From IMG/VR virus record IMGVR_UViG_3300032236_002285, positions 412,237 through 476,236 of that record: a DNA stretch of 64,000 nt. One strand, given 5' to 3'. Within the stretch, counting starts at the first letter, position 1. Each line of letters opens with the position of its first letter. The notes beneath the pieces were generated by a model. It was not told the origin of the DNA and did not search any database. It was given only the letters and a program-made list of their open reading frames with translations. Shown here one piece after another: positions 23,479-62,866 of this stretch. A program made the position numbers and the translations under genes.

Positions 23479-23717
23479 TTTAATATTTTATTTATTTGTT
23501 GTTCTCTAAATTCTTCTAACGTCATAAAATGTTTAGCATCCATCTTCCTAAACTTACCATCATCACACTTGATAACATATGATGGTGCTACAGGTTTTAA
23601 TGTAACTGGATCATAAATAACAGGAGTCAATTCACACTCATAAAAGCTACCTGGCTTTACATAGTAAGCCATTTCATCAACTGGTGATATAGTATCTTTA
23701 AGATAGAGTGTAGCCAT
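23475..23717 (-). CDS. Small protein, C-tag
   Basis: Ends REQQINKILK; TATCTTTG 4 nt upstream of ATG. Confidence 0.7.
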   Translation of the reverse strand: MATLYLKDTISPVDEMAYYVKPGSFYECELTPVIYDPVTLKPVAPSYVIKCDDGKFRKMDAKHFMTLEEFREQQINKILK

Positions 23718-23721
23718 TTTA

Positions 23722-23729
23722 CAAAGATA
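23722..23729 (-). promoter_or_regulatory. Bacteroidota sigma70 -7 element
   Basis: TATCTTTG-TAAA-ATG. Confidence 0.65.
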
Positions 23730-23740
23730 GTTATTTTTAT

Positions 23741-23974
23741 TTAGATTCCTAATTCACTTAACTTTTTATCTCTATCCTCTTTAACTGAACAAGATTCACA
23801 TTTTGTAGGCTCTCCTCTGAATCCACCTTTATATAGGTCTAATTCTTTTTTACAAGATTCACAAAGCTCACCAATACCAATTGAAAATAATTCATCAGAA
23901 TCATATTTACCATATGACTTAGGTTCTTTCAAATCAAGATGTAAAATTGTTTTGATAAGATCTACAAATTTCAT
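23741..23974 (-). CDS. Zn-finger small protein, C-tag
   Basis: CESC..CESC; ends RDKKLSELGI. Confidence 0.7.
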   Translation of the reverse strand: MKFVDLIKTILHLDLKEPKSYGKYDSDELFSIGIGELCESCKKELDLYKGGFRGEPTKCESCSVKEDRDKKLSELGI

Positions 23975-24198
23975 ATACCTAATTCATTTAGTTTATCTTC
24001 TCTTAAATCTACTATATCAATACAATCTTCTGGTATTATAGCCCAACTAGTCAAACCATGTGACTTAATAACACGGTAATATTCATCTTTGTCATTAAGA
24101 CCAACCTCAAATACTTCACCCACTTTATCATGATACCAATATCTGTCTGTACTAGATTCTGAGTAATCACAAGAGCATTTTATAATTTTTACTTTCAT
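23971..24198 (-). CDS. SH3-like small protein, C-tag
   Basis: MKVKII..KVGEVFEV; ends REDKLNELGI. Confidence 0.7.
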   Translation of the reverse strand: MKVKIIKCSCDYSESSTDRYWYHDKVGEVFEVGLNDKDEYYRVIKSHGLTSWAIIPEDCIDIVDLREDKLNELGI

Positions 24199-24482
24199 AT
24201 TCCTAAATCATTTAGCTTAATATCTCTATCTAATTCAGTTGAGATATTTTTTAACTTCTTTGATAGAAACCACATTAAGCCAGAATCACCAAACTGATAT
24301 GGTTCTTCGGGCCAAGAGTCTCTATCTTTTGAGTTCATCTGTCTTGCTTCTTCGCACCATTCTTCTGGTATCAATTTATAGATTTCTTCATCCAAGTCAT
24401 TACAACCGTGATTATCAAATTCATCTTTAGCCATCATCAACATCTTTGATGATAACTCTAATAGCAATTTTATATCTTTCAT
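24195..24482 (-). CDS. Small protein, C-tag
   Basis: Ends RDIKLNDLGI. Confidence 0.7.
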   Translation of the reverse strand: MKDIKLLLELSSKMLMMAKDEFDNHGCNDLDEEIYKLIPEEWCEEARQMNSKDRDSWPEEPYQFGDSGLMWFLSKKLKNISTELDRDIKLNDLGI

Positions 24483-24706
24483 ATCCCTATGTGTTTAAGT
24501 TTCTTTTGTCTTAACAAGTTTAAGTATTCTGACTTTAATAAACAAAGAGTATGTCCATCCATTTGTCTATTTGGTACATCAAATGAAACTAAAATATCAT
24601 TCTCTCTTTGAGAGATAGTATGAATTTTAATATCCATTGGATTTTCTAAACCAATGTTCCATTTGTATAAACAAATGTCATATAACAACTCTTCATCTAA
24701 TATCAT
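24479..24706 (-). CDS. Small protein, C-tag
   Basis: Ends RQKKLKHIGI. Confidence 0.7.
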   Translation of the reverse strand: MILDEELLYDICLYKWNIGLENPMDIKIHTISQRENDILVSFDVPNRQMDGHTLCLLKSEYLNLLRQKKLKHIGI

Positions 24707-25065
24707 ATACCCAAACCATTTAACTTTTGATCTCTCTTATATAACAAAGAAACTTCAATGTTATTATCTTCTGGATAACTTAAAACATTTTGTAAGTAGT
24801 CATAAACTTCTTGAGTTCTACCTTCGTCTGATTCATATCCATAAAGATATCCACCTCTGAATATTCTACCATCAGATGGATCATCAATCTCACCTTGAGC
24901 AGTTAGTATCAATGATTCTATTTCACCTTCATCAATACCAAAAGATTTTAATTGATTAAGTAAATCAATCAAATCTTCCAATCTTTCTTTATAGTCCCAA
25001 CCCCAGTTGCCTCTAAGGTCTAATTGTAAGTGACCAATTGCGGTTTTCAATTCTTCTATATTCAT
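24703..25065 (-). CDS. Small protein, C-tag
   Basis: Ends RDQKLNGLGI. Confidence 0.7.
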   Translation of the reverse strand: MNIEELKTAIGHLQLDLRGNWGWDYKERLEDLIDLLNQLKSFGIDEGEIESLILTAQGEIDDPSDGRIFRGGYLYGYESDEGRTQEVYDYLQNVLSYPEDNNIEVSLLYKRDQKLNGLGI

Positions 25066-25277
25066 ATTCCTATTTTTTCTAAATTATCTATTCTTGTTTT
25101 TACTTTAACTGATATCCAATGTTCATCACCACAAAATTGAGATTCCGGATCAGTTATACTGGCTTCTGAGCCGTGTAAGTGACAAGCAAACTCAACACAC
25201 CAATTAGCTGATGTGTATAGTTCAGGTCTGCTTTTATCAATAAAAAACAAACAATTTTTACAACACTTTTCTCTCAT
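25062..25277 (-). CDS. Cys-rich small protein, C-tag
   Basis: CCKNC..C..C..C; ends RIDNLEKIGI. Confidence 0.7.
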   Translation of the reverse strand: MREKCCKNCLFFIDKSRPELYTSANWCVEFACHLHGSEASITDPESQFCGDEHWISVKVKTRIDNLEKIGI

Positions 25278-25528
25278 ATTCCTAAATCGGTTAAAGTGTT
25301 ATCTAATTTCAAATCTTTATTCCATTCTTCTAACTCATTTAAATAATATTCTTTGCTTACCCATTTAGCACCATTATAAACTGCCTTATCCATTCCATAC
25401 CAAACGGTTGCCATTGCTTTATCAAACTCAACATAAAGACCGTTGTGAGGTGTATCTATGCTTACGAGTATACCAAACCCATCTTCAGTTTTAACCTCTT
25501 GAAATATTCTTAAAAATGATGGTTTCAT
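25274..25528 (-). CDS. Small protein, degenerate C-tag
   Basis: Ends KLDNTLTDLGI. Confidence 0.7.
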   Translation of the reverse strand: MKPSFLRIFQEVKTEDGFGILVSIDTPHNGLYVEFDKAMATVWYGMDKAVYNGAKWVSKEYYLNELEEWNKDLKLDNTLTDLGI

Positions 25529-26352
25529 ATAGCAACTAAATCTTCGTATTTAAATTTTGTTTGTTTTTTCTTTTTATTAATGAACTTAACCTCATTTACC
25601 ACTAAATCACCTTTTTCTATCTCAGATTTAATTTTATCAAATGTTTCTTTTTTTGGTTCAAATAATTTAAGTGAGTCCCAAATGCTACCAGAATGTATTG
25701 AAGCATTATAAACTTCTATCAAACCATCTTTATAGTCATATGAAAACCAAACACCTTCTACCCAAACAGATCTACCTCTTTGAATATTAAATGCGATATC
25801 AAGTGCAACTTCTCTCCAGTAAGATTTAGTGAGAGCTTCACAAGCTGGTTTTGACCAATCTAATATACCTCTAGCATCCTTGACATTCTCAGGAAAACTA
25901 ACTTCATATTTTACTCCTTCAATTCCATCCACACTAAATCTTCTCTCTTCTGAATAGTGACCCGCGTATTTGAGTTTATCTTTTTGGTGAACTACTGGTA
26001 TAGTCCATTCATCAATATTGCTAAATTCTGGATTTCTTTCTAAAAATGTTTTTAGCTTAATACTCACATTTGATGAGGTTTTGTAATGATCATACCCATT
26101 AACGCCTGTTATAAATTTAGGCGATGTATCTGATTTAGGATTAAAAAAGAAACCAACATTTATTGTAAGAACATCCCAGTTGTTAGCATTGAAACTTAAT
26201 CCGTAGATATCACGACTACACAAAGGCCTGCTGTCAATAGAAGGTGGACAAATACCAATTAAATCCTTAGTATATCCTGGTGAGTTTAGAATTTCTTGTC
26301 TAATGACTTCTAATACCGGATGGTCTTTTTTTATTGTATAAATTTTTTTCAT
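25525..26352 (-). CDS. Hypothetical protein
   Basis: 275-aa ORF, ATGA-coupled, no C-tag. Confidence 0.7.
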   Translation of the reverse strand: MKKIYTIKKDHPVLEVIRQEILNSPGYTKDLIGICPPSIDSRPLCSRDIYGLSFNANNWDVLTINVGFFFNPKSDTSPKFITGVNGYDHYKTSSNVSIKLKTFLERNPEFSNIDEWTIPVVHQKDKLKYAGHYSEERRFSVDGIEGVKYEVSFPENVKDARGILDWSKPACEALTKSYWREVALDIAFNIQRGRSVWVEGVWFSYDYKDGLIEVYNASIHSGSIWDSLKLFEPKKETFDKIKSEIEKGDLVVNEVKFINKKKKQTKFKYEDLVAI

Positions 26353-34977: not shown

Positions 34978-36435
34978 TTATCTACCAGTGACGGTAACAT
35001 TATCAATAATCATATCAGATGTAACTTGATTATGCTTATAGATTGTTATATTATATTCACCAGAAGTAACTGATTCTTTTGATAACTCAAAATAGAATTT
35101 AGTATAAGGTCTGCCATTTGAATTCAATGGAGTGCAACATCCTTTTCTACAAGATTTACCTTGCATCTTATCATCAAAGCCAAAGAAGTTCATAAATCCA
35201 ACAAAGTATTTACTACCAGGATAATAGATTTCACTAGCTGGTATGTTTAAGTAAACTTCATAAATACCTCTTGGTACTTTATCAAAAGACACAGATACTT
35301 CCATATTCATTTTACGGAATGAATTATTATCAGATGTTAATAAACCATCAACTCTAAGACTTGTAAAACCTGAGGCAACCTTAACATTTACATTCTTATT
35401 AGCAATAACTTTAATAGGTGTTGCTTGAACTAATGTGTTTTGAGATTTAGGTTGAACCTTTGTATCATCAAAATCATAATCCATATTGTATATGATTTTA
35501 ATAACCGAATCCATTGTATATTCTACCTTTTTACCATTCTCATCAAAGAATACATAGGGCCATTCAACAGACTTCAATTCTTCTAAAGTAATCATTTTAC
35601 CATTTTCAGAATTAGTCCATTGTTGCCAGATTCTATCAATGTTAGAGTGATGTAACCAAAAAATTGGATCAAAACCAGCAGTTGGTACCCAACCCATTAA
35701 TCCTGTATTAGTAACAGAGTTTGTGATAGGATTGTTAAATTTAAGTAACCCTGTTGTATCATTACCAGCACCAATATAATCATGCATTGCTCCGTGAGGT
35801 GCCGCATTGATATTCATACAAAAAGTATAATAATCTGTATAAGACATTAACTTAGTCATATCTAATGCTCTTTCGATTTCACCAGAGATAGGGTAACCAT
35901 TGTTTAAACTATCATATCTACAAGATTCATATAAAGCTGACTTTGAATCTCTAAACATAACAGGCATCATTTTGTCAGAATCGTTTAAGTTTGTATAACC
36001 CCAATAAGGTAAAGCAAAGTCTTTCTTTCCTGATAATTTTCTTACAATCTTTTCAAAGTGCCAGATATAAAGTCTGTGCCAAACTAAGAAGTGTATTTTT
36101 TCTTTACCAGAAGGTGAGTGAGTACAATTGTCCCAAGCTTCTTTTAAATCAGCTACGGTGCTATAAGATTCACATAAAGGATTCTTACCAATTGAATCTG
36201 GAATCCAGTGCATTGCACCTTGATAGTACCAACTCATTGGATCAGTACATCCTTTCTCTCTCATAATAGTCAAAGCCTTATTCATAGCCTCAATATCTGA
36301 CTGAGCTTCTGTCGAGTTAGCATTCTTTCTAACAAAACGACCTATCTTATTATGTGCGAAGTGAGTATAAACAACACCAGTCATGATAGATAACACCAAT
36401 ATAATGATTAGTGATGAAATTGTTTTTCTATTCAT
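34978..36435 (-). CDS. Tyrosinase / polyphenol oxidase (type-3 copper) with N-terminal signal or TM anchor
   Basis: CuA AMHW..CTH..HFLVWHR, PYW; CuB PHGAMHDYIG..DPIFWLHHSNIDRIW. Confidence 0.92.
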   Translation of the reverse strand: MNRKTISSLIIILVLSIMTGVVYTHFAHNKIGRFVRKNANSTEAQSDIEAMNKALTIMREKGCTDPMSWYYQGAMHWIPDSIGKNPLCESYSTVADLKEAWDNCTHSPSGKEKIHFLVWHRLYIWHFEKIVRKLSGKKDFALPYWGYTNLNDSDKMMPVMFRDSKSALYESCRYDSLNNGYPISGEIERALDMTKLMSYTDYYTFCMNINAAPHGAMHDYIGAGNDTTGLLKFNNPITNSVTNTGLMGWVPTAGFDPIFWLHHSNIDRIWQQWTNSENGKMITLEELKSVEWPYVFFDENGKKVEYTMDSVIKIIYNMDYDFDDTKVQPKSQNTLVQATPIKVIANKNVNVKVASGFTSLRVDGLLTSDNNSFRKMNMEVSVSFDKVPRGIYEVYLNIPASEIYYPGSKYFVGFMNFFGFDDKMQGKSCRKGCCTPLNSNGRPYTKFYFELSKESVTSGEYNITIYKHNQVTSDMIIDNVTVTGR

Positions 36436-44244: not shown

Positions 44245-44587
44245 TTCCTAAAACATTATTTAGTTTCTCATCTCTCTTTTTCTCAATTTTCAATAAATCT
44301 ATATCTTCTCTTGATAATTTTTCATATTGCTTGAACTCACGAATGTTTTTACAATAGATAATAAAATCCCATTCCCAATAATTTTCATCATCAATATCTT
44401 CCACAATATGCACACCTAACCACAAATGAGACTTTGTTCCATAACTTTCGTGTGACCAAAGAATAATATTAAACATTTGATCACGAATAAAATCAGTAAA
44501 ACTTCTAGCATTATCAAACTCCCAAAACATAGGTATATGGCTATATGATCCATTACCACCACCTATATTCATTGATACTTTTATCAT
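44237..44587 (-). CDS. Hypothetical protein, C-tag
   Basis: Ends RDEKLNNVLGND. Confidence 0.7.
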   Translation of the reverse strand: MIKVSMNIGGGNGSYSHIPMFWEFDNARSFTDFIRDQMFNIILWSHESYGTKSHLWLGVHIVEDIDDENYWEWDFIIYCKNIREFKQYEKLSREDIDLLKIEKKRDEKLNNVLGND

Positions 44588-44644
44588 AACAAAACATTTA
44601 ATTTTAAATATCTAATATTATCTTTTCTCTACACTCTGGTATAT

Positions 44645-44986
44645 TCATAATAATCTATCTAGTTTATACTGACGTTTCAATTGTTTCTCCCATTCTGGTG
44701 AAGGATACAAACCCAAAGGATTTCTATCAGACTGCATTTTATCCATCAAACTACCTTCTGCTTTAATCATAACTTTAACACTCCAGAAAGTTAAGTGTTG
44801 AGTATATTCAACTATTTCATAGTTATATATATCAGGTCCTAAACCAACCATCATACCAATTGGATACCACTTCTCTAAAATCTGTAATTGTAAATCTTTA
44901 GGAGTAGAATTAAAACGCAATAAGGCGGCCCTATCACGAGTGTGATAGTCCCACCATATTAACGATTTTTTACCAAATGTGCTCAT
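44645..44986 (-). CDS. Hypothetical protein, C-tag
   Basis: Ends RQYKLDRLL. Confidence 0.7.
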   Translation of the reverse strand: MSTFGKKSLIWWDYHTRDRAALLRFNSTPKDLQLQILEKWYPIGMMVGLGPDIYNYEIVEYTQHLTFWSVKVMIKAEGSLMDKMQSDRNPLGLYPSPEWEKQLKRQYKLDRLL

Positions 44987-50500: not shown

Positions 50501-50889
50501 TATATTCCTATTTGTTCTAATTTTTTATTTCTTAACCACTCATTATATAATGATTCAAATGCTTCATCATCCCATTGAAAACCAAAGATATAAGTTGAAC
50601 CACCACACCATCTTGACCAAACATCATAAAATAAATTCCAAGATTTAAATAACTTTTCTAATGACTCAGCTTCTTCCCTTGTAGTGTATAATTGAAAACC
50701 TGACTCAGATAAGTACATCATTAAAACATCAATCTTATGTGAACGGTTGCTCCAGTTTTCTAAGTACCACTCACCTTTCAAGTCTTTAACTTGTTGCTTT
50801 ATCTCAGGTAAATGATGGTCACAATATCCCTTTGTAACAATATCAAATACCTCAAAAGGTTTTAGTTTCCTAATTATACGCCAACTCAT
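50500..50889 (-). CDS. Hypothetical protein, C-tag
   Basis: Ends RNKKLEQIGI. Confidence 0.7.
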   Translation of the reverse strand: MSWRIIRKLKPFEVFDIVTKGYCDHHLPEIKQQVKDLKGEWYLENWSNRSHKIDVLMMYLSESGFQLYTTREEAESLEKLFKSWNLFYDVWSRWCGGSTYIFGFQWDDEAFESLYNEWLRNKKLEQIGI

Positions 50890-51158
50890 ATTCCTAACTT
50901 ATTTAGTTTTAAATCTCTTTCACCAGCCAAATCCACAAAACACTCAATTGGTACAAACTCTTCATGAAAGTAATAAGGACCTTTTAACTTAACACATATT
51001 CTATCCGGAAAATGAAAATCAACATCAGTTACTTTATATTTTTCACCTATGATTAAACGCTCATTATCATAATCACCACCTATATAACCAATAGAATAAG
51101 AATTTAACTTAACACAAGTTAAAATATCACCTATTTTGAAATCTTTATATGTTTTCAT
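50886..51158 (-). CDS. SH3-like small protein, C-tag
   Basis: IGDILTCV..LIIGEKYKV; ends RDLKLNKLGI. Confidence 0.7.
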   Translation of the reverse strand: MKTYKDFKIGDILTCVKLNSYSIGYIGGDYDNERLIIGEKYKVTDVDFHFPDRICVKLKGPYYFHEEFVPIECFVDLAGERDLKLNKLGI

Positions 51159-51544
51159 ATACCTAACTCACTTAATATTTTATCACGCTTAATCGCTTCA
51201 TCTGAATCAAAGTAAATATCACCACGAAGATAAAACTCCATCGTCTCAGTATAGTTTTGACCATGTTGTGATGAACGAAACTGAACCGTTAACCTCTTTG
51301 CTTTAGCAACCAAATCTGGACAATCCAATATCTTTGATTTTAACTGCTCACGAATATCCTTTTTAACCCAATTCATCAACTCATGTGTTAAACACGAACC
51401 GTTCATTGTACTGCGCTCAACTTCTTCATAAGCATCCTGATATCGTGTAGGTAATCTAAACTCTAAAGTATCAACCTGCCAAAACATCCACCAATACTTG
51501 CGGTAAACCGCATAACCCTTATTATGTTTTTTAATATAACCCAT
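51155..51544 (-). CDS. Hypothetical protein, C-tag
   Basis: Ends RDKILSELGI. Confidence 0.7.
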   Translation of the reverse strand: MGYIKKHNKGYAVYRKYWWMFWQVDTLEFRLPTRYQDAYEEVERSTMNGSCLTHELMNWVKKDIREQLKSKILDCPDLVAKAKRLTVQFRSSQHGQNYTETMEFYLRGDIYFDSDEAIKRDKILSELGI

Positions 51545-52043
51545 CTAATATCTTATTTAAAACATTATCTCTTCTTAAAGCAACATAGTCAAAGTATTCA
51601 TCTACCAAGCGAACCGTATAAACAAAACACGGCTTACCTAAACTATTACCACCTTTACCTTTAGCAGCACCTAATCTATACAATTCATCATCAGATAATA
51701 AACAAAATGAATTAATTTGACTATCTGAACAAAGGCATTGAAAGTAAGGCATATCTATCTTCTTGGTATATAAATCATGAAATTCTTTAGTAGTTTTATA
51801 ACCAGGTATCACCTCATGTAAAGTTTCTTCAGTATAACCCTTACGAATCCACTCAATTGAATTACAAACCAATCCATTGTAATACCAATACTTATCATAA
51901 TCAGTAATAATCTGAGTTGATTTAAAAACAATTTTACCAAGATACTCTTGACCAGGTATAAGTATCTCACCCCAATGAGCCGCCATTGATTTCTTACACT
52001 TCAATGTCAAAGATTCTCCTAATTTTGTTTTTTCTAAGTTCAT
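51531..52043 (-). CDS. Hypothetical protein, C-tag (start uncertain)
   Basis: LKCKK..LIPGQEY; RDNVLNKIL near end. Confidence 0.65.
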   Translation of the reverse strand: MNLEKTKLGESLTLKCKKSMAAHWGEILIPGQEYLGKIVFKSTQIITDYDKYWYYNGLVCNSIEWIRKGYTEETLHEVIPGYKTTKEFHDLYTKKIDMPYFQCLCSDSQINSFCLLSDDELYRLGAAKGKGGNSLGKPCFVYTVRLVDEYFDYVALRRDNVLNKILDGLY

Positions 52044-52116
52044 TTCTCAAAGTTTTAATTGTTTGCCTCATAGCACGAGCAAACGTTTCATCAGCTAATC
52101 CATTCATCCAACTCAT
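51994..52116 (-). CDS. 40-aa C-tag protein (not in ORF track)
   Basis: MSWMNGLADETF...LRKNKIRRIFDIEV*; ATGA-coupled to the ACP-like gene. Confidence 0.5.
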   Translation of the reverse strand: MSWMNGLADETFARAMRQTIKTLRNELRKNKIRRIFDIEV

Positions 52117-52403
52117 AAACCCAACTCTTCTATTTTCTTATTACGAAGATACGATTTAAATACCATCGGCTTTTTATTTCCTCCAATAAAAGCATCCACC
52201 ACTTCATCTGGAATAACAATGTCTAATCTTTTCTCTAGCTCCATTGCCAACTCAACACAATCTAAATCATCATAACCATTATCATTCCAAGTTTTATTCA
52301 TATCTAATGGATAACCTATCTTTTCATTAGCAACCTCCATCAAAATCTCTGGAGTTACCTTAACTATATCTGGACACTTTTCGATCATTTCTAATTCTGT
52401 CAT
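52113..52403 (-). CDS. Acyl carrier protein-like protein lacking the pantetheine serine, C-tag
   Basis: GYDDLDCVELAMELEKRLDIVIPDE versus ACP GxDSLDxVELxMxxE..F.IxIPDE; ends RNKKIEELGL. Confidence 0.8.
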   Translation of the reverse strand: MTELEMIEKCPDIVKVTPEILMEVANEKIGYPLDMNKTWNDNGYDDLDCVELAMELEKRLDIVIPDEVVDAFIGGNKKPMVFKSYLRNKKIEELGL

Positions 52404-52777
52404 AGTATTTGCTTTAATTTTTTATCTCTTATTTCTTGTAATAGTGAAGGTATATACTGACCCCACTTTATATAAATCTTCATCTTTTCAGCATCCCAAT
52501 CAAAATCATCAATTGATTTATAACTATTTTTGCCATATACCGCCGTGTGATGATTAATCAACATATCAATACACTCATTCATAAACACCTGACGAATTCC
52601 AATATCCGATATCTCACCAGCCCAATCTGTTAACTGCTTATGAAATTCAGACCACTCATTTAACTTTCTCATTCGCTTACTATGTTGACGGGTTTCTTTA
52701 AAGAATCTCCAAACTATTCCAACAATTACAAACAAAAACACTAAAAATAATGCCGCTTGTATAATCTTAAATATCAT
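52400..52777 (-). CDS. N-terminal TM protein, C-tag
   Basis: Ends RDKKLKQIL. Confidence 0.7.
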   Translation of the reverse strand: MIFKIIQAALFLVFLFVIVGIVWRFFKETRQHSKRMRKLNEWSEFHKQLTDWAGEISDIGIRQVFMNECIDMLINHHTAVYGKNSYKSIDDFDWDAEKMKIYIKWGQYIPSLLQEIRDKKLKQIL

Positions 52778-53067
52778 ATACCTAACTTATTTAACTTTTC
52801 TTGACGATTTATTAATTTAGTAATATCAACCAAATACCCTTTAGTAAAACAACCAGCAATAGTTAACCTAACACTCGTCATTTTATCCCAATCTATTGTA
52901 AATTCAGCATCATACTCTACCTTACCAAACACCACCTTAGGACCTTTATCTGAATACATATGAATAGTAATAATATCACCAATATCAAAATGATGATAAT
53001 AATGAACATCAGTATCTAAACAGATACTAACACCACCCTTCATTACTTCTAAATAATAAACCGTCAT
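52774..53067 (-). CDS. Small protein, C-tag
   Basis: Probable start ATG 53067, 6 nt after TATCTTTG; ends RQEKLNKLGI. Confidence 0.7.
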   Translation of the reverse strand: MTVYYLEVMKGGVSICLDTDVHYYHHFDIGDIITIHMYSDKGPKVVFGKVEYDAEFTIDWDKMTSVRLTIAGCFTKGYLVDITKLINRQEKLNKLGI

Positions 53068-53073
53068 AAAACA

Positions 53074-53105
53074 CAAAGATACGAATAATATTTTAAAAAA
53101 ACAAA
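53074..53105 (-). promoter_or_regulatory. Bacteroidota sigma70 promoter
   Basis: TTTG-N20-TATCTTTG. Confidence 0.7.
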
Positions 53106-54632: not shown

Positions 54633-54821
54633 ATGGTAAGAGTACCTTGTTATAACTGCGGAATAGGAATTGATTTAGAACCAATCGGGATTCGGTCGGG
54701 TTATGATACCTTATGTAAAGAATGTAAATGCCATATAGAATCAGATAAAAGAGATAAGAAGTTAGACAAACTATTGAAAAGAAATATATGGCAACGAATA
54801 AAACAACTTATAAAAATATAA
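54633..54821 (+). CDS. Zn-ribbon protein, C-tag + amphipathic tail
   Basis: CYNC..CKEC; RDKKLDKLL-KRNIWQRIKQLIKI. Confidence 0.65.
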   Translation: MVRVPCYNCGIGIDLEPIGIRSGYDTLCKECKCHIESDKRDKKLDKLLKRNIWQRIKQLIKI

Positions 54822-54976
54822 ACGGGGTTTATAAATTAAAGATAATAGTATGTAATAATTGCGGTACTATCATGGATGGTGAAGTTAGTTCTTGTACCGT
54901 ATGCAGAGATGCGAAATTGGGTAAATTACTGAAAAGGTCTATTTGGAGGAAAATTAGAGATTTTGTTAGATTATAA
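54788..54976 (+). CDS. Zn-ribbon paralog, C-tag + amphipathic tail
   Basis: CNNC..CTVC; RDAKLGKLL-KRSIWRKIRDFVRL. Confidence 0.6.
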   Translation: MATNKTTYKNINGVYKLKIIVCNNCGTIMDGEVSSCTVCRDAKLGKLLKRSIWRKIRDFVRL

Positions 54977-54982
54977 AAACAT

Positions 54983-55009
54983 TACAGAAAAGTGCTACGT
55001 TTTTCTGTA
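54983..55009 (+). repeat. 27-bp imperfect palindrome, copy 1
   Basis: tacagaaaa-gtgctacgt-ttttctgta. Confidence 0.85.
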
Positions 55010-55231: not shown

Positions 55232-55258
55232 TACAGAAATTTGCTGCGTTTTTCTGTA
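55232..55258 (+). repeat. 27-bp imperfect palindrome, copy 2
   Basis: tacagaaat-ttgctgcgt-ttttctgta. Confidence 0.85.
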
Positions 55259-55263
55259 GTCAA

Positions 55264-55290
55264 TTATATACCTAATGACTCTAATTTATC
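55264..55290 (-). pseudogene. Orphan C-tag-coding remnant
   Basis: GAT AAA TTA GAG TCA TTA GGT ATA TAA (DKLESLGI*) directly after the stop of 55289..55534. Confidence 0.6.
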
Positions 55291-55534
55291 ATATACCTAA
55301 TGATTTTAGTTTTTTATCACGACTTTCGTCTAAGTTTAATTCTGTATCGCGCCAGTGAGCGTATAAACTCTTAGTTTGTAATTGCTTTTTAGAACATCTT
55401 TTACATATTCGGAATAAGGTATGCTGCTGCCAACGGTAGGTTGAGCTGTTTTGCTTTTTTACCACAAGAGAGCCAAAAGAATCGCGATCTGTAAAGTATC
55501 GCCAGTTGTGGCCTATTATTTTACAAAGTATCAT
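55289..55534 (-). CDS. DUF1660-like small protein, C-tag
   Basis: CKIIGHNW..CKRC; ends RDKKLKSLGI. Confidence 0.7.
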   Translation of the reverse strand: MILCKIIGHNWRYFTDRDSFGSLVVKKQNSSTYRWQQHTLFRICKRCSKKQLQTKSLYAHWRDTELNLDESRDKKLKSLGI

Positions 55535-55665
55535 ATTCCTAAATTTCTTAGTTTCTGCTGTCCTACTGGTGATGTAGCATCTTCATTTACATCACCATAG
55601 AATGTTATAAAGATAAAGATAAAAAGTGGGTCTACAAAATTATGTAGCGTTTTTCTGTAACTACT
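55531..55665 (-). pseudogene. Start-less frame ending in C-tag
   Basis: ...SPVGQQKLRNLGI*; no ATG/GTG/TTG in frame; 5' part overlaps palindrome copy 3. Confidence 0.45.
55633..55659 (+). repeat. 27-bp imperfect palindrome, copy 3
   Basis: tacaaaatt-atgtagcgt-ttttctgta. Confidence 0.8.
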
Positions 55666-55882
55666 TTAGAATAGAATCTATCTTTGTTTCTCGCCATTTG
55701 TCTAATGGGGTTAGTATCCTTTCAATTGTGTTTAAGTGTAGTGTTGTTACCCGTTTATTTTCGGTGGTGAATATATCACGGTATGCACCGCCTAGTGATA
55801 GTGGTGTTTTTATTATATAGATGTTACCTTTTTGGAAGGTGATATCGTGTAGAGTAAAGGTTTTTATACAGATGTATTTCAT
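55661..55882 (-). CDS. SH3-like small protein, C-tag
   Basis: MKYICIK..FQKGNIYI; ends RETKIDSILK. Confidence 0.7.
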   Translation of the reverse strand: MKYICIKTFTLHDITFQKGNIYIIKTPLSLGGAYRDIFTTENKRVTTLHLNTIERILTPLDKWRETKIDSILK

Positions 55883-55903
55883 ACTTTTTCGAGTATTACA
55901 TAT

Positions 55904-55930
55904 TACAGAAAAGTGCCGCGGATTTCTGTA
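55904..55930 (+). repeat. 27-bp imperfect palindrome, copy 4
   Basis: tacagaaaa-gtgccgcgg-atttctgta. Confidence 0.85.
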
Positions 55931-55935
55931 GTTTA

Positions 55936-56748: not shown

Positions 56749-57306
56749 TTAAATGTTATTATATCCCTCAACGGATTCTACTGGTGGTTTTCCAATCTCT
56801 TGTAGGAAATCGTTTAATCTATCGATGATTATCTCATCATCATGTATAATATCATAATCATTAAACAATTCTATATAATCTTTATTATAGAATAATAGCC
56901 AAATGTCACTAACTGGGTTATTATAAAGGTAAATATCACCAACAACCACCTTTGGAAAATGTTCTAACGATGTTAATTTATTATTTTTACAACTAAAATA
57001 ACCACCAACGGATTCAGGACAATCTTCCAAAGATGTTAATTGATTATAAGAACAATTAAAATTACCACCAACGTATTTAGGAGCACCTTCCAAAGATATT
57101 AGTTTATTATCAATACAATTAAAATCACCAGTAACCTTTCTAAACTTTAATGGTAGCTTTGCTAATCCTTTATTTTCTAAATCAACATTACCATCAACAT
57201 CAATCGAACCATCTTCGTTAATAGTATAATCTTCTATACCACAAATTTTACATATATCATCAATGTCATTTTCAATAAATGATTCATATAGTTTTAAGTA
57301 TTTCAT
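56749..57306 (-). CDS. LRR protein paralog A with CTS-like leader
   Basis: Probable start ATG 57306 (MKYLKLYESFIE); about 22-aa repeats VGGxFxCxxNxLTSLExxP. Confidence 0.85.
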   Translation of the reverse strand: MKYLKLYESFIENDIDDICKICGIEDYTINEDGSIDVDGNVDLENKGLAKLPLKFRKVTGDFNCIDNKLISLEGAPKYVGGNFNCSYNQLTSLEDCPESVGGYFSCKNNKLTSLEHFPKVVVGDIYLYNNPVSDIWLLFYNKDYIELFNDYDIIHDDEIIIDRLNDFLQEIGKPPVESVEGYNNI

Positions 57307-57310
57307 TATC

Positions 57311-57922
57311 TTATATATTATTATATCCTTCAACGGATTTCACTGGTGGCTTACCAATCTCTTGTAAGAACTCATTTAATCTATCAATGATAATGCTATT
57401 ACCACGAATAACATCGTAATCGTTGAGTAATTCAATCTTATCTTTATCCTTGAATAATTGCCAAATATTATCAACCGGATTATCATAAAGGTAAATATCA
57501 CCACCAACCTGTGGGAAATGTTCTAAAGATCTTAATTGATTATTACAACAATTAAAATAACCACTAACTGATCTAGGAGAACCAACCAAACTAGTTAATT
57601 GATTATGACTACAATCAAAACGATCACCTACCGATTCAGGACAACCTTGCAAACTAGTTAATCTATTGAAAGAGCAATAAAAACTACCACCAACATATTG
57701 AGGAGAACCCTCTAATGATGTTAATTGATTATTAGAACAATAAAAAGTACCAGTAACCTTACCGAACTTTAGTGGTAGCTTTTTTAATCCTTTATTATTT
57801 AAATTAACATTACCATCGACATCAATAGATCCATCCGAGTTTATAGTATAGTTTTTTATACCATACTTTTTACAGATAGCATCAATTTCATTAAATGATT
57901 CATATAGTTTTAAGTATTTCAC
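57311..57922 (-). CDS. LRR protein paralog B with CTS-like leader
   Basis: GTG start, MKYLKLYESFNE; one more repeat than paralog A; near-identical caps. Confidence 0.85.
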   Translation of the reverse strand: MKYLKLYESFNEIDAICKKYGIKNYTINSDGSIDVDGNVNLNNKGLKKLPLKFGKVTGTFYCSNNQLTSLEGSPQYVGGSFYCSFNRLTSLQGCPESVGDRFDCSHNQLTSLVGSPRSVSGYFNCCNNQLRSLEHFPQVGGDIYLYDNPVDNIWQLFKDKDKIELLNDYDVIRGNSIIIDRLNEFLQEIGKPPVKSVEGYNNI

Positions 57923-59819: not shown

Positions 59820-60061
59820 TATTTAATTTCTAATACGTTAAATACGTTATCAATCTTAGCTTCTCTGATATCTGCTAACTCTACATAATAGATAATAGCA
59901 GAGTATGATTCAATTGATCGATGAGGTCCAGAAGAAACACCTATTGAGTATTCTGTTTTGATAATCTGTCTGATATCAATTTTTTGTAGAAAGTCATTAA
60001 CCGCAACTTCTAATGTATGAGTATGGTCCTCATTAAATATCTTTACTTTAGCATTTATCAT
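59819..60061 (-). CDS. Small protein, C-tag
   Basis: REAKIDNVF near end. Confidence 0.65.
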   Translation of the reverse strand: MINAKVKIFNEDHTHTLEVAVNDFLQKIDIRQIIKTEYSIGVSSGPHRSIESYSAIIYYVELADIREAKIDNVFNVLEIK

Positions 60062-60315
60062 ATACCTAGTTCTTTTAATTTCTTATCTCTTTCTTGTTCT
60101 ACATTCAGCGCAACATTACGCCAATCCGTTTTTTCATCACCAGAATGTGCCACTCTAACTTGATTAATAAAACACCTTGGACAATATCTAAATTCAGTAT
60201 TTACTGGAAAGGTATATGATGGTATTACTCTATGTGTTAAATTAACAGGTGATGTTATATGGGGAACATCTTCTTTATAGTAGTTCCACTTATGACCAAA
60301 CAACTTACACTTCAT
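60058..60315 (-). CDS. DUF1660-like small protein, C-tag
   Basis: MKCKLFGHKW..CPRC; ends RDKKLKELGI. Confidence 0.7.
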   Translation of the reverse strand: MKCKLFGHKWNYYKEDVPHITSPVNLTHRVIPSYTFPVNTEFRYCPRCFINQVRVAHSGDEKTDWRNVALNVEQERDKKLKELGI

Positions 60316-60550
60316 TTGCTTCTGTTTGTTTTATCAACTCTAATATAATAGATTTATTATCTTGACAGGTTTGAATTAGTGAATGAAGTAATGGTATACC
60401 ACCATCAGTAGCAAGTATCTTTTGAAATTTATCTTCATTTGACAATATGTCAGTTAAGGTCCAAAATGGACTTAGTTTATTTCTAAGCTTTGCTTGTGGG
60501 GTTTCTGGTACCCAATTACCGTTAATATCTCTGGTGCCGCTATCTTGCAT
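60305..60550 (-). CDS. Hypothetical protein
   Basis: 81-aa ORF. Confidence 0.6.
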   Translation of the reverse strand: MQDSGTRDINGNWVPETPQAKLRNKLSPFWTLTDILSNEDKFQKILATDGGIPLLHSLIQTCQDNKSIILELIKQTEANEV

Positions 60551-60553
60551 ATA

Positions 60554-60775
60554 TTACTTTAATTGTATCATAGAAACAGACTCTACACCTCTGTAAATAA
60601 GAATTGTAGTTGAGTCATTTAATTGTACTTTATATAAACCGTGATCTATTTCATCCATTACTTTTTCTACTTTAGTATTAGATGAAGGTGCGGGTGAGTT
60701 GTTTTCAGTTGTTACCACTGGTGTGTTACAAGCAAAAAGACATAGTGTGATTAGAATGATAAGTATATTTTTCAT
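60554..60775 (-). CDS. Small lipoprotein
   Basis: MKNILIILITLCLFA-C lipobox. Confidence 0.7.
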   Translation of the reverse strand: MKNILIILITLCLFACNTPVVTTENNSPAPSSNTKVEKVMDEIDHGLYKVQLNDSTTILIYRGVESVSMIQLK

Positions 60776-60835
60776 AATGTAAATATAAGATAATTAATTG
60801 AATAAACAAAATAGATATAAAATATAAAAGTTTAT

Positions 60836-61132
60836 ATGATTATATATAAAGGTGTTTCTTATAACTCTACTAAATTAATTTGCACTAGTAAGCTATCTTT
60901 AATGTTAAGCTACCCTAATTATAACAAATTAGAAATAGGTAAGATATATGATGGTTTCTTAGTTTATGTTTATGGTAATGGTACATCTGGTTGTGTTGAT
61001 AAACCAAATGGAGATAATACTCAACCATGTGGTTGGTATATAGATGGAGTTAGTAGTTCTATAAATGAGAACTTTGGTCTTGAGTTTTTTAAGCCACTTA
61101 GAGATTACAACTTATCATTGATAAATTTATAA
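60836..61132 (+). CDS. SH3-like small protein, degenerate C-tag
   Basis: KLIC..LEIGKIYD; ends RDYNLSLINL. Confidence 0.6.
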   Translation: MIIYKGVSYNSTKLICTSKLSLMLSYPNYNKLEIGKIYDGFLVYVYGNGTSGCVDKPNGDNTQPCGWYIDGVSSSINENFGLEFFKPLRDYNLSLINL

Positions 61133-61354
61133 TATTCCTAACTTCTTTAGTTTCTTATCACGAGTATATTCAATTGATTCAAATCTTTTATGATGATAAA
61201 AACGTTTATTGCCATAATCATTAATAATAGCAAATGAATGGTCGCTAATAGAAACATTATCACCTAACACTTCATAAGCTTTACCAATAGTTAAATTGAC
61301 ATGTTCATCTTGAGCACCATCAACTTCACCATTATTAATACAAACTACTTTCAT
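61127..61354 (-). CDS. SH3-like (DUF6501-like) protein, C-tag
   Basis: MKVVCIN..LTIGKAYEV..IINDYG; ends RDKKLKKLGIL. Confidence 0.7.
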   Translation of the reverse strand: MKVVCINNGEVDGAQDEHVNLTIGKAYEVLGDNVSISDHSFAIINDYGNKRFYHHKRFESIEYTRDKKLKKLGIL

Positions 61355-61626
61355 ATTCCTAACTGATCTAATTTTTGATTTCTATATTCTTCTAAGGTAA
61401 TAAAATTATTAGGGTCAACATCCATAGTTGTTTCTAATTTATCATGATGGATAATAAGATACGACTTACCATGACCCCTTCCTGTGCATTTATCATAAAC
61501 TTCAAAGATATCACCTTTATAATAAGCTCTTTCAATATAAACACCTTTATAATAATAACCTTTCTTAGGTATCGCCCGAAATGCCTTTAGGGGCAGCGGC
61601 GCGTCATTAATAGCAATCACTTTCAT
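61351..61626 (-). CDS. SH3-like small protein, C-tag
   Basis: MKVIAIN..KGDIFEV; ends RNQKLDQLGI. Confidence 0.7.
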   Translation of the reverse strand: MKVIAINDAPLPLKAFRAIPKKGYYYKGVYIERAYYKGDIFEVYDKCTGRGHGKSYLIIHHDKLETTMDVDPNNFITLEEYRNQKLDQLGI

Positions 61627-61841
61627 AGAATCTTATCTAATTGTCTCCTTCGCCATTCATCTAATTTAAGGAATGTGCTTTTATAGTAATACTCTTTGTG
61701 ACCTCTATCATTTATTATCCACCAGTTGTAATTATCAATACCCGGTAGGCCGCATCCTGGCAGGACATCATATATCTTACCATAGGTTAATTCATATTGT
61801 AAACCTTGTGACCTGTATTTCTTAATACAAACTACTTTCAC
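61623..61841 (-). CDS. SH3-like (DUF6501-like) protein, C-tag
   Basis: MKVVCIK..LTYGKIYDV..IINDRG; ends RRRQLDKIL. Confidence 0.7.
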   Translation of the reverse strand: MKVVCIKKYRSQGLQYELTYGKIYDVLPGCGLPGIDNYNWWIINDRGHKEYYYKSTFLKLDEWRRRQLDKIL

Positions 61842-62059
61842 TTCAATATCTTTTTAATCTTCTCTTCTCTGTGGCAAGCTTCACAAATTAACTTACTATC
61901 ACCAATAGTTAAATCACCTGTTGGTCTCAATATAACATGAATTATAATATTTACAATGGTAACAAATCTACTAGGTTTCTTAACAAAGTATTTATCTTTT
62001 ACTAAATCAAATTTAGATTGACAATCGGGACAAGTTCTTTCAGTTATTCTCTTACTCAT
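61838..62059 (-). CDS. Zn-ribbon protein, C-tag
   Basis: CPDC..CEAC; ends REEKIKKILK. Confidence 0.7.
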   Translation of the reverse strand: MSKRITERTCPDCQSKFDLVKDKYFVKKPSRFVTIVNIIIHVILRPTGDLTIGDSKLICEACHREEKIKKILK

Positions 62060-62184
62060 ATGCCTAACTCATTTAACTTTTCTTCTCTAAGAATAGATGT
62101 TATATCATTAATACATCTAATTGGTTTTAATTCACCATCAACTAAAGATATGTAATAACTATTATCTTTAACAGGATAATTCAT
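62056..62184 (-). CDS. 42-aa C-tag protein (not in ORF track)
   Basis: MNYPVKDNSYYISLVDGELKPIRCINDITSILREEKLNELGI*. Confidence 0.7.
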   Translation of the reverse strand: MNYPVKDNSYYISLVDGELKPIRCINDITSILREEKLNELGI

Positions 62185-62428
62185 TCTTTTTCCAGCTTCT
62201 TAGAGTATTATTACCAATCATTAAATTCAATTTATTCAATTGAATTTCATTGTCTAATCTAAATTTTATACCATAAACATTTTTCAAAAAGCTCATACCG
62301 AAATCATTTTCTAATAAAGTTTCAATAGGTGTACAATCAAATTCTTTTTTTACATTAGCAATAATGTTATTGTAAGAATTTATAAAATCTTCTTTAGATT
62401 GAAATTTAGATTTATAAATAAAATTCAT
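62168..62428 (-). CDS. Hypothetical protein
   Basis: 86-aa ORF. Confidence 0.55.
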   Translation of the reverse strand: MNFIYKSKFQSKEDFINSYNNIIANVKKEFDCTPIETLLENDFGMSFLKNVYGIKFRLDNEIQLNKLNLMIGNNTLRSWKKNELSC

Positions 62429-62474
62429 TTTAAATATATCATAATTAATGTGTAAAGTTGTAAATATTTATACC

Positions 62475-62501
62475 TACAAAATTCCGCATCGTTTTTCTGT
62501 A
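62475..62501 (+). repeat. 27-bp imperfect palindrome, copy 5
   Basis: tacaaaatt-ccgcatcgt-ttttctgta. Confidence 0.75.
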
Positions 62502-62505
62502 GTTT

Positions 62506-62778
62506 TTAAATGCCTAACGCTTCGAGTTTATCTTGTCTAATAGATTGTGTATCTAATATCATAGTGCCACTATAATGACCTGTTACCATATTACGAAGTT
62601 GTTCATATGAATAGTTAATAATACGACCATTTTCCCATTCAATAGCAACTTCATACTCAAACGGAGCATTAACAACTTTCCCATGTGTATTTAATTTAGA
62701 GAGTGTATTTTCTTTATCAACCATTTCCTCTATCCAAATAACTTTATCACCTATATTTAGTTTCATAGAATCAATCAT
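62506..62778 (-). CDS. SH3/KOW-like small protein, C-tag
   Basis: LNIGDKVIW; ends RQDKLEALGI. Confidence 0.7.
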   Translation of the reverse strand: MIDSMKLNIGDKVIWIEEMVDKENTLSKLNTHGKVVNAPFEYEVAIEWENGRIINYSYEQLRNMVTGHYSGTMILDTQSIRQDKLEALGI

Positions 62779-62866
62779 TATAAAATATTTAATTCAACTT
62801 CTTTGATTTCTAATTGGTCATTTGTGTACACTTCATGAGTGTATATCTACCCTAAATTAGGGTGTA

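What the first reader, a model, noticed from the sequence alone, without database searches (positions are those of the whole stretch)
55264..55665. Orphan C-tag scars on both sides of one gene suggest tag-mediated gene shuffling
Gene 55289..55534 (ends KKLKSLGI*) is followed immediately by a second tag fragment DKLESLGI* with no gene body. It is preceded by a start-less frame ending QQKLRNLGI* whose stop overlaps its ATG. Both scars abut 27-bp palindromes. Inference: tag-coding DNA provides microhomology for deletion or insertion of cassettes, which could explain how the tag spread to so many unrelated ORFs (accordion-like arrays).
Basis: partly seen in the sequence, partly recalled or inferred. 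Interest (0 to 1): 0.62.

Follow-up and report, generated by a model that had tools for sequence, protein, structure and literature searches.

The report
Gene stumps inside hairpin-bounded phage cassette
The two "orphan tags" are real leftovers of decayed small genes inside a 401-bp one-gene cassette of a 476-kb freshwater jumbo phage. Related strains show that the cassette comes and goes by recombination between its flanking hairpin repeats, not between the tags, so this is ordinary phage accessory-gene turnover.

Summary
Gene 55289..55534 (-) ends ...RDKKLKSLGI*. A 10-codon frame ending DKLESLGI* follows it, and a start-less frame ending QQKLRNLGI* precedes it with its TGA inside the gene's ATG. 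Both abut copies of a hairpin repeat.

- **Right stump:** 25/25 nt match the 3' end of an intact 72-aa gene in a related phage contig (L077), so it is a deletion remnant.
- **Cassette:** two independent assemblies of a ~98% identical strain (L075, L076) lack 401 bp (stump + gene + stump). Their junction is a hybrid hairpin crossed over in a 13-nt core shared by the two repeats. L077 carries four other genes at this site.
- **Other stumps:** at least six more occur in the window and its relatives. They arose by internal deletions with 0-4 nt microhomology, a frameshift and in-frame stops.
- **No tag x tag junction was found.** Tags are conserved as peptide, not as DNA (median shared run 6-7 nt).
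- **Breakpoints** pile up at gene junctions generally. Tagged junctions are used only about 1.4 times more often than untagged ones.

Best reading: ordinary gene decay in a hyperplastic array, with PeSL-like hairpin repeats as the demonstrable recombination sites. The tag makes the remnants visible. It also overlaps the next gene's start, which probably protects it from deletion.

The parts
55264..55296 (-). Right stump: the last 8 codons plus stop (DKLESLGI*) of a deleted 72-aa-type gene. It is out of frame with the gene before it and has no start codon.
   Evidence: Positions 55268-55292 are 25/25 nt identical to the 3' end of the intact gene L077 12798..13016 (...EIRNDKLESLGIN*). This 25-mer occurs nowhere else in the genome or in the fetched loci.
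55289..55534 (-). The cassette's gene: an 81-aa DUF1660-like zinc-ribbon-type protein ending RDKKLKSLGI*.
   Evidence: Pfam DUF1660, E 7e-4, 20.5 bits, just under the 21.4-bit cut-off. PHROG 2670. 37% identical to the paralog 60058..60315. No other homolog among 5.8 billion proteins.
55531..55631 (-). Left stump: start-less 3' remnant (...YGDVNEDATSPVGQQKLRNLGI*) whose TGA overlaps the ATG of the DUF1660-like gene. The parent gene is unknown.
   Evidence: No start codon in frame. Gly sits at the otherwise near-invariant Arg position of the motif. Only a weak likeness to the ...DITSxxREEKLNxLGI family. No parent found.
55632..55660 (-). Hairpin repeat pal3, a degenerate copy whose 3' arm reads TTTTGTAG. 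It directly follows the stop of the 73-aa gene.
55232..55258 (.). Hairpin repeat pal2 (TACAGAAA-N11-TTTCTGTA), 5 nt after the right stump.
   Evidence: Homology with L075, L076 and L077 ends exactly at 55258.
55246..55258 (-). 13-nt core TACAGAAAAACGC of pal2. It is a direct repeat of 55647-55659 in pal3, and the crossover in the cassette-less strains lies within it.
   Evidence: The junction in L075 and L076 consists of pal3's left flank, the shared core and pal2's right part.
55259..55659 (-). The 401-bp cassette (right stump + DUF1660-like gene + left stump + spacer + part of pal3). It is present or absent between strains.
   Evidence: Absent from L075 (ENA) and L076 (JGI). Replaced by four other genes in L077. 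Run X2's contig also stops at 55245.
55661..55882 (-). Upstream 73-aa gene with a variant tag (RETKIDSILK*). In L075 only its last 21 nt (IDSILK*) survive, next to the hairpin.
54983..55009 (.). Hairpin repeat pal1, at the point where the + and - strand gene blocks converge. It is terminator-like for the + strand operon.
55904..55930 (.). Hairpin repeat pal4, between the 112-aa and 73-aa genes.
   Evidence: Conserved in L077.
62474..62502 (-). Hairpin repeat pal5, directly after the tagged gene 62506..62778.
44584..44628 (-). Third stump in the window: DNIRYLKLNVLL*, the remnant of a 66-aa gene. The gene's first 8 codons also survive at 44606..44650.
   Evidence: The intact gene is L075 2675..2875. 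The window carries an internal 136-nt deletion with 3-nt microhomology.
60058..60315 (-). Paralogous DUF1660 gene. Its tag/stop/start junction shares 16/16 nt with the junction in the finding. Its ortholog sits in a different gene context in L077.

Best explanation
**Setting.** The window is the last 64 kb of a 476-kb tailed jumbo phage, probably of a Bacteroidota host, from freshwater metagenomes. Its accessory arrays hold about 100 small, mutually unrelated genes. They share a C-terminal peptide motif and are tightly stacked, often with the stop of one gene overlapping the ATG of the next.

**What the orphan tags are.** They are pseudogene stumps: 3' ends of former array genes whose bodies were lost.
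- Shown: the right stump is the end of a 72-aa gene that is still intact in a relative.
- Inferred: it was cut down by a deletion running from the stop/start overlap of the DUF1660-like gene into the tag-coding DNA. The microhomology is ATGA for certain and possibly ATGATAAAT.
- Inferred by analogy: the left stump is the same kind of remnant. Its parent is unknown.

**Why stumps persist and get noticed.**
- Deletions, frameshifts and nonsense mutations are frequent in these arrays.
- The last codons of a gene usually overlap the start and initiation region of the next gene, or abut a hairpin. Deletions that spare them are therefore the ones tolerated (inference).
- The conserved tag makes 3' remnants recognisable, whereas 5' remnants go unseen.

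**What moves.** The unit at this locus is the whole 401-bp cassette. It is bounded by two copies of a hairpin repeat, and strains differ by recombination in the 13-nt core the two copies share. The phage encodes no tyrosine or serine recombinase, so this is short-homology recombination of the kind described for PeSL elements of T4-like phages, not a site-specific system.
For: - **Genome context:** 476,236 bp, 30% GC; large terminase; T9SS-type Por_Secre_tail and CHU_C domains in phage genes.
- **Tag:** on at least 97 ORFs whose bodies fall into 93 BLAST clusters. The peptide rather than the DNA is conserved, as the Ile codon switches with junction type.
- **Right stump:** 25/25 nt identical to L077 12798..13016. 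The 25-mer is unique, and tag-to-tag shared runs are otherwise 16 nt or less, with one pair at 23.
- **Cassette polymorphism:** homology of L075, L076 and L077 to the window ends at 55258. In L075 and L076 the end of the 73-aa gene is joined to a hybrid hairpin made of pal3's left flank, the shared core and pal2's right part. L077 homology resumes at 55662, with four other genes in between. The cassette-bearing form is seen in a second sample.
- **Further stumps:**
  - window 44584..44628, from an internal deletion of a gene intact in L075;
  - L075 8611..8766 and 8071..8187, from 1.1- and 1.4-kb deletions with breakpoints in gene bodies and 0-4 nt microhomology;
  - IDSILK* in L075;
  - L077 2832..2918 and 3754..3882, from in-frame stops;
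  - L056 and L026/L043 in unrelated jumbo-phage contigs.
- **Overlap with the next gene:** 51 of 95 tagged genes overlap the next gene's start, against 128 of 556 untagged genes.
- **No site-specific recombinase:** no integrase or resolvase in the genome.
- **Hairpin family:** conserved in other phage contigs, with 98% of stem cells paired.
- **Precedent:** PeSL elements (PMC2839356, PMC4122927).
Against: - The parent of the left stump was not found, so calling it a remnant rests on analogy.
- The direction of the cassette event is not resolved: insertion in the window's lineage or deletion in the L075 lineage.
- Several deletion endpoints lie in or within 3 codons of a tag: the right stump, the L056 stump, IDSILK*, the 5' end of the L075 1.1-kb deletion, and three stumps of exactly tag + 3 codons. 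This is more than about 11% tag DNA would predict, so some endpoint bias towards tag DNA cannot be excluded.
- Hairpin covariation is weak: one variable pair, 175 of 500 shuffles as good.
- No promoter or terminator activity is shown. The sigma-70 scan was no better than shuffles.
- Only three related contigs cover this locus.
Confidence: 0.75

Rival explanations
1. Tag-coding DNA, repeated at about 100 gene ends, is itself the recombination substrate: tag x tag or tag x start microhomology. It drives cassette deletion and insertion, and so spread the tag to unrelated ORFs.
For: - Tags are more alike in DNA than other coding windows (57% against 31% identity), and 4% of pairs share 12 nt or more.
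- The right stump's junction lies in tag DNA, with 4-9 nt microhomology to a gene start.
- About half of the stumps end within 0-3 codons of the tag's 5' edge.
- Tagged junctions carry 0.42 breakpoints each, against 0.30 for untagged junctions.
- Homology of shuffled genes ends at ORF borders.
Against: - No hybrid tag or tag x tag junction occurs among the six recent events between the window and L075.
- The one clean repeat-mediated event uses the hairpin core.
- At tagged junctions, 26 of 42 breakpoints sit at the stop/start overlap rather than inside the tag.
- Synonymous codons vary freely in the tags.
- The median shared run is only 6-7 nt.
- The enrichment at junctions is equally expected if selection simply favours intact neighbouring genes.
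- Stumps were found by their tag, which biases the sample.
Confidence: 0.15
2. The stumps are functional and kept by selection for their own sake. They could act as translation-coupling or initiation pads for the next gene, as tags reached by ribosomal frameshifting, or as ready-made 3' adaptors that give a newly captured ORF the tag.
For: - The left stump's stop overlaps the gene's ATG.
- The same double-tag architecture occurs in L056.
- In L026/L043 the tag sits in the -1 frame at the end of a 49-aa gene.
- Most tagged gene ends overlap the next gene's start.
Against: - The right stump is followed by a hairpin, not by a gene.
- The left stump has Gly at the conserved Arg position and QQ where D/E is usual, which looks like relaxed constraint.
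- The whole cassette is dispensable in a ~98% identical strain.
- L026 and L043 are the same sequence, so they give no independent support.
Confidence: 0.07
3. The right stump is a local tandem duplication, by replication slippage, of the gene's own tag.
For: The two adjacent tags share 13 identical nt and the uncommon Ser in ...SLGI.
Against: It matches the end of the 72-aa gene of L077 better (25/25 nt) than the adjacent tag (about 22/25 with a 3-nt indel).
Confidence: 0.02
4. Assembly or sequencing artefact.
For: The record is a metagenome assembly.
Against: - The same arrangement and spacing occur in a second sample.
- The Logan contig of run X1 is identical over the stretch, although it may be the source.
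- The stump matches real genes in other assemblies.
Confidence: 0.01

Closest known systems
PeSL (promoter-early stem-loop) regulatory cassettes of T4-type phages (Arbiol et al. 2010, PMC2839356; Comeau et al. 2014, PMC4122927)
   Same: - Short repeated intergenic stem-loop motifs concentrated in hyperplastic regions full of small ORFan genes.
- Indels and replacements between closely related phages have their endpoints in the motifs.
- Single-gene cassettes are bounded by two copies.
   Different: - The sequence is different, and the phage is a 476-kb, probably Bacteroidota-infecting phage rather than a T4-like coliphage.
- There are only about 5 copies, all within 7.6 kb.
- No sigma-70 promoter part is recognisable, and promoter and terminator activity are untested.
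- The stems are weak (-5 to -8.5 kcal/mol) and AT-rich, not G/C tracts.
- Mini-circles were not looked for.
Integron gene cassettes with attC sites
   Same: Promoter-less single-gene cassettes, each followed by an imperfect palindromic site. Cassette gain or loss leaves hybrid sites.
   Different: No tyrosine recombinase (IntI) or any integrase or resolvase in the genome. The palindrome is 27 bp and has no attC-like features. The 13-nt identical core is enough for general short-homology recombination.
Gene-boundary ('linker') sequences and illegitimate recombination followed by selection in phage mosaicism (modular theory of lambdoid phages; from my own knowledge)
   Same: Mosaic joints fall at gene borders, and a conserved short sequence lies at many borders. 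Here that sequence is the tag plus the ATGA overlap.
   Different: Here the conserved border sequence is a translated peptide motif under amino-acid selection. No recombination joint inside it could be demonstrated.
Spontaneous loss of ORFan regions in cyanophage (PMC4503421), and pseudogene remnants in hyperplastic regions generally
   Same: Dispensable small genes are lost by deletion, leaving fragments.
   Different: Here the remnants are conspicuous because each carries a lineage-wide C-terminal tag.
Poxvirus 'genomic accordions' (from my own knowledge)
   Same: Only the metaphor of expanding and contracting arrays is shared.
   Different: Accordions are tandem copy-number changes of one gene. 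Here the array genes are unrelated to one another (93 clusters from 97 genes), and no copy-number variation of this cassette was seen.

Membership tests
PeSL-like shuffling element | Repeated intergenic motif concentrated in the variable (hyperplastic) part of the genome | tested here: met
   The 12-mer CGTTTTTCTGTA occurs 4 times in 476 kb, all within window 54998-62501, and there is one variant copy. All lie between small accessory genes.
PeSL-like shuffling element | Stem-loop structure | tested here: met
   An 8-9 bp stem with an 11-nt loop, -4.8 to -8.5 kcal/mol. 97.7% of stem cells are paired across 11 distinct copies from four phage contigs; one pair varies GC/GU/AU.
PeSL-like shuffling element | Contains a strong host-type early promoter | tested here: inconclusive
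   Sigma-70-type sites are no more frequent than in shuffles. The host is probably Bacteroidota, whose promoters that scan does not cover. In L034 the repeat is followed by TTTG-N20-TATATTTG, but the window copies show no clear match.
PeSL-like shuffling element | Indels between closely related phages end in the motif | tested here: met
   L075 and L076 have a hybrid pal3/pal2 junction that removes 401 bp. Homology of L075, L076 and L077 ends at 55258, and L077 homology restarts at 55662.
PeSL-like shuffling element | Excised mini-circles | not testable with these tools
   Only contigs of public runs were available, not raw reads.
Integron cassette system | Tyrosine recombinase (IntI) encoded nearby | tested here: not met
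   No PF00589 or PF00239 match anywhere in the genome, while the control genomes gave matches.
Tag-mediated (linker-sequence) homologous recombination | Repeated DNA identical over a length usable for homologous exchange | tested here: not met
   Tag pairs share a median of 6-7 nt. 4% share 12 nt or more, and the maximum is 23 nt in one pair. Synonymous codons vary.
Tag-mediated (linker-sequence) homologous recombination | Recombination joints lying inside the repeated sequence (hybrid tags) | tested here: not met
   None among the six events between the window and L075/L076. At tagged junctions, breakpoints cluster at the stop/start overlap.
Pfam DUF1660 (prophage protein) | Score above the curated cut-off (21.4 bits) | tested here: inconclusive
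   Gene 55289..55534 scores 20.5 bits (E 7e-4), just below the cut-off. Its paralog 60058..60315 scores 26.7 bits, above it. The two proteins are 37% identical.
Pseudogene remnant (right stump) | Sequence identity to the matching part of an intact gene elsewhere, with no start codon or body | tested here: met
   25/25 nt identical to L077 12798..13016. The frame is 10 codons long and has no start.
Pseudogene remnant (left stump) | Sequence identity to the matching part of an intact gene elsewhere | tested here: not met
   No parent was found in the genome, in the fetched loci or in IMG/VR. The classification rests on the lack of a start codon, the tag and the analogous cases.

The most novel reading that the evidence does not exclude
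In a widespread lineage of AT-rich jumbo phages, probably infecting Bacteroidota, about 100 unrelated small proteins per genome carry one C-terminal docking peptide (RDxKLxxLGI). The arrays might be renewed by a two-part system. Hairpin repeats would act as PeSL- or attC-like cassette borders. Tag stumps, which keep the tag, the stop and the coupled restart, would serve as landing pads that hand the tag to newly captured or newly born ORFs. That would explain how one tag came to sit on unrelated bodies.
Probability: 0.12. Interest if true: 0.75.

Novelty: new member of a known kind. Interest (0 to 1): 0.42.

Why it matters
The result turns a speculative reading into a documented case. It provides a traced gene remnant, a precise cassette presence/absence polymorphism between natural strains, and the repeat that mediates it, all in an uncultivated 476-kb phage.

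It also extends PeSL-type modular shuffling, known from T4-like phages, to a very different jumbo-phage lineage.

The more unusual feature is the tag itself: one C-terminal peptide on about 100 unrelated proteins, seen in 69 loci from dozens of metagenomic phage contigs. This work shows that the tag is under amino-acid selection and that its spread is not explained by DNA-level recombination at the tag. Its function therefore remains an open and testable question.

Tried and rejected
- **Relatives in public collections.** Megablast of 10 kb against GenBank phages gave no match. The search for related loci with the 81-aa and the 1431-aa proteins in IMG/VR found no relatives. The word search with the 81-aa protein found only itself, and with the 73-aa protein only L077.
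- **Large tag-bearing contigs.** The 81-aa protein gave only one weak hit in five contigs of 312-483 kb, so these phages are not syntenic here.
- **Metagenome scan** for the right flank of pal2 gave three chance hits at 39-40% GC with no homology.
- **Parent of the left stump.** BLAST against all frames of the genome, tblastn against all fetched loci, alignment with the DITS...LGI family and a degenerate-codon scan of IMG/VR gave nothing convincing.
- **Rfam** on 54800-56100 gave no family.
- **NCLDV capsid search** was negative, but its controls were silent too, so it is uninformative.
- **RNA-level function of the tag** (for example a coupling signal) was rejected because synonymous codons vary and Ile is kept with different codons.
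- **Slippage duplication** for the right stump was rejected.
- **An integron-like mechanism** was rejected for lack of any recombinase.
- **The breakpoint census** is crude. HSP ends are fuzzy, some loci overlap each other, and tag similarity can carry an HSP through a tag. I use it only qualitatively.

Full report
**Context.** The window is the last 64 kb (412237-476236) of a 476,236-bp virus record with 30% GC. The record encodes a large terminase and no tyrosine or serine recombinase. Nearby phage genes carry T9SS-type Por_Secre_tail and CHU_C domains, so I infer a Bacteroidota host. Runs holding the sequence are freshwater and microbial-mat metagenomes. Stops at tag ends are TGA, TAA and TAG, so the standard code applies.

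**The observation.** On the minus strand, gene 55289..55534 (81 aa) ends ...ESRDKKLKSLGI-TGA.
- Immediately after it, in another frame, a 10-codon stop-to-stop frame (55264..55296) reads VYDKLESLGI*.
- Upstream, a 44-codon frame without ATG, GTG or TTG (55531..55665) ends ...GQQKLRNLGI*. Its TGA lies inside the gene's ATG.
- A perfect hairpin repeat, TACAGAAA-N11-TTTCTGTA (pal2, 55232-55258), lies 5 nt from the right stump.
- K[LI]xxLGI* ends 19 frames in the genome, against 0-1 in the reversed and shuffled genomes. Only two of the 19 lack a gene body, and both flank this gene.
- A contig from a second sample encodes identical 73-aa and 81-aa proteins with the same 126-nt spacing, so the arrangement is not an assembly artefact.

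**The tag.**
- The LGI* ending is one form of a wider C-terminal motif, R[DE]xK[LI]xx[LI] followed by 0-8 residues. It is carried by at least 97 ORFs of 40 aa or more, enriched in the last 120 kb of the genome.
- With the tag trimmed off, these proteins fall into 93 BLAST clusters.
- The gene in the finding is DUF1660-like, and 60058..60315 is a paralog.
- The tag is conserved as peptide. Leu, Gly, Lys and Arg codons vary. The final Ile is ATA in 17 of 23 LGI* tags; 16 of those 23 end in TGA, forming ATATGA with the next gene's ATG. Where the stop is TAA or TAG, Ile is ATT or ATC in six of seven tags.
- 51 of 95 tagged genes overlap the next gene's start, against 128 of 556 untagged genes.
- A degenerate DNA pattern for the tag finds 69 loci in IMG/VR. 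They have 22-47% GC (nearly all 24-35%), and many come from contigs of 170-483 kb. The tag is therefore a lineage-wide feature.
- I found no paper describing it.

**Relatives of the locus.** Laying contigs of public runs on 53300-59200 showed related strains whose homology broke near 55245 and resumed beyond 55685 or 56304. Through a neighbouring 129-aa protein I fetched three contigs:
- L075 (ENA) and L076 (JGI, another sample), both about 98% identical to the window;
- L077 (Logan), about 80-90% identical.

**The right stump is a traced remnant.** L077 12798..13016 encodes an intact 72-aa protein ending ...EIRNDKLESLGIN*. Its last 25 nt before the Ile codon's third base are identical to window 55268-55292. 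That 25-mer occurs nowhere else. Tag pairs otherwise share 16 nt or less, with a single pair at 23.

The stump begins exactly at the ATGA where the DUF1660-like gene's stop overlaps what was once the next gene's start. At the paralogous locus the same 16 nt occur, and there ATGATAAAT starts the next gene. I infer a deletion between a gene start and the tag-coding ...AAT GAT AAA TTA... of the 72-aa-type gene. Its microhomology is 4 nt for certain and possibly 9 nt. A slippage duplication of the adjacent tag fits worse (about 22/25 nt with an indel).

**The cassette moves at the hairpins.** Homology of L075, L076 and L077 to the window ends at 55258, the last base of pal2. In L075 and L076 the minus strand reads, in order: the last 21 nt of the 73-aa gene (IDSILK*), T, the core TACAGAAAAACGC, then the loop, right arm and flank of pal2. 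This is the window with 401 bp removed (55259-55659) by a crossover in the 13-nt core shared by pal3 and pal2.

In L077 homology resumes at 55662, and four other genes (116, 74, 95 and 76 aa) fill the gap. Three different sequences therefore abut pal2. Whether the window gained the cassette or L075 lost it cannot be decided.

Five copies of the repeat exist, all in window 54983-62502. Related copies occur in L077, L034 (a 281-kb contig; stem G-C changed to A-T) and L078. Across these, 98% of stem positions are paired, but only one pair varies, so the covariation evidence is weak. pal1 is terminator-like for the + strand operon.

**Stumps are common and of mixed origin.**
- Window 44584..44628 (DNIRYLKLNVLL*) is what remains of a 66-aa gene intact in L075. 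An internal 136-nt deletion also left its first 8 codons; the microhomology is 3 nt.
- L075 and L076 carry deletions of 1,362 and 1,091 bp relative to the window. L077 has the deleted DNA, so these are deletions. They leave start-less C-terminal remnants of 30 and 49 codons. Breakpoints are mostly in gene bodies, with 0-4 nt microhomology, and an A-run frameshift lies nearby.
- L075 keeps only IDSILK* of the 73-aa gene.
- L077 has two tagged genes split by in-frame stops.
- Unrelated jumbo-phage contigs show the same double-tag architecture (L056), and a tag in the -1 frame at a gene end (L026 and L043, which are the same sequence).

**Are tags recombination sites?**
- For: tag DNA is more self-similar than other coding DNA (57% against 31%). 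About half of the stumps end within 0-3 codons of the tag's 5' edge.
- Against: no rearrangement joins tag to tag. The single clean repeat-mediated event uses the hairpin core.
- The breakpoint census covered 15 related loci and 167 HSP-end breakpoints, which are not independent of one another. 42 fell at tagged junctions, 67 at untagged junctions and 58 elsewhere. By chance about 10% would fall at any junction. Usage per junction was 0.42 for tagged and 0.30 for untagged. Within tagged junctions, 26 of 42 breakpoints lie at the stop/start overlap.
- Gene-sized units do move. The DUF1660 paralog sits in a different context in L077, with nucleotide homology confined to the ORF. Selection for intact genes explains this as well as tag microhomology does.

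**Conclusion.** The orphan tags are pseudogene stumps in a hyperplastic array. The cassette that holds them is delimited and mobilised by PeSL-like hairpin repeats (PMC2839356, PMC4122927). The tag makes stumps visible, and because it overlaps the next gene's start it is probably protected from deletion. A modest bias of deletion endpoints towards tag DNA remains possible. It is not needed to explain the data, and it does not explain how the tag spread.

Noticed in passing
whole genome; window e.g. 23257..25549, 50886..53076, 60058..62793 (-): At least 97 ORFs end in R[DE]xK[LI]xx[LI](GI/LK/...)*. Their bodies form 93 unrelated BLAST clusters. The same tag pattern occurs in 69 IMG/VR loci from AT-rich contigs, many of them jumbo phages. 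Its function is unknown, and no paper describing it was found.
   Followed up: partly
window 55010-55231: A 222-bp segment richer in G+C lies between pal1 and pal2. It is conserved in L075 and L077, with blocks better conserved than the neighbouring genes. It has no Rfam match and no clear covariation. It may be a small RNA or a regulatory region.
   Followed up: partly
window 56749..57333 and 57311..57922 (-): Tandem paralogs with leucine-rich-repeat-like units. Contigs of run X3 show many joints and high summed depth here, as expected for recombining repeat genes shared by many related phages.
   Followed up: no
L077 2832..2918 and 3754..3882 (-): Two tagged genes are interrupted by in-frame stops, leaving start-less tag-bearing frames. 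One stop is TGA where the window has Trp TGG; the other is TAA. They could be real pseudogenes or contig errors.
   Followed up: partly
L026 920..961 (= L043 3473..3514): A complete tag, KVLRDQKLKKLGI*, sits in the -1 frame at the end of a 49-aa gene, and its TGA overlaps the next ATG. This is either a frameshift mutation or possibly programmed frameshifting.
   Followed up: no
L034 3818-3844, 4127-4153, 5488-5514, 9086-9112: A 281-kb phage contig carries the same hairpin family with a compensated stem (TACAAAAA/TTTTTGTA) and a conserved loop. Each copy is flanked by a second GGAGAAA...TTTCTCC hairpin and followed by TTTG-N20-TATATTTG, which resembles a Bacteroidota -33/-7 promoter.
   Followed up: partly
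window 34978..36435 (-); L074 1-673 and 1535-2161; L075 11585..13675: A tyrosinase-domain protein, and proteins with T9SS sorting domains (Por_Secre_tail, CHU_C), are encoded by the phage or its close relative. This points to a Bacteroidota host.
   Followed up: no
window 54633..54821 and 54788..54976 (+): Two overlapping 62-aa Cys-rich paralogs carry the motif internally (RDKKLDKLLKRNIW..., RDAKLGKLLKRSIW...), followed by a 12-15 residue basic extension.
   Followed up: no
whole genome record: IMG/VR labels the record 'provirus', but it has no integrase or resolvase. It is a 476-kb record (a longer contig of 481 kb exists) that CheckV rates 97% complete. The label looks doubtful.
   Followed up: partly
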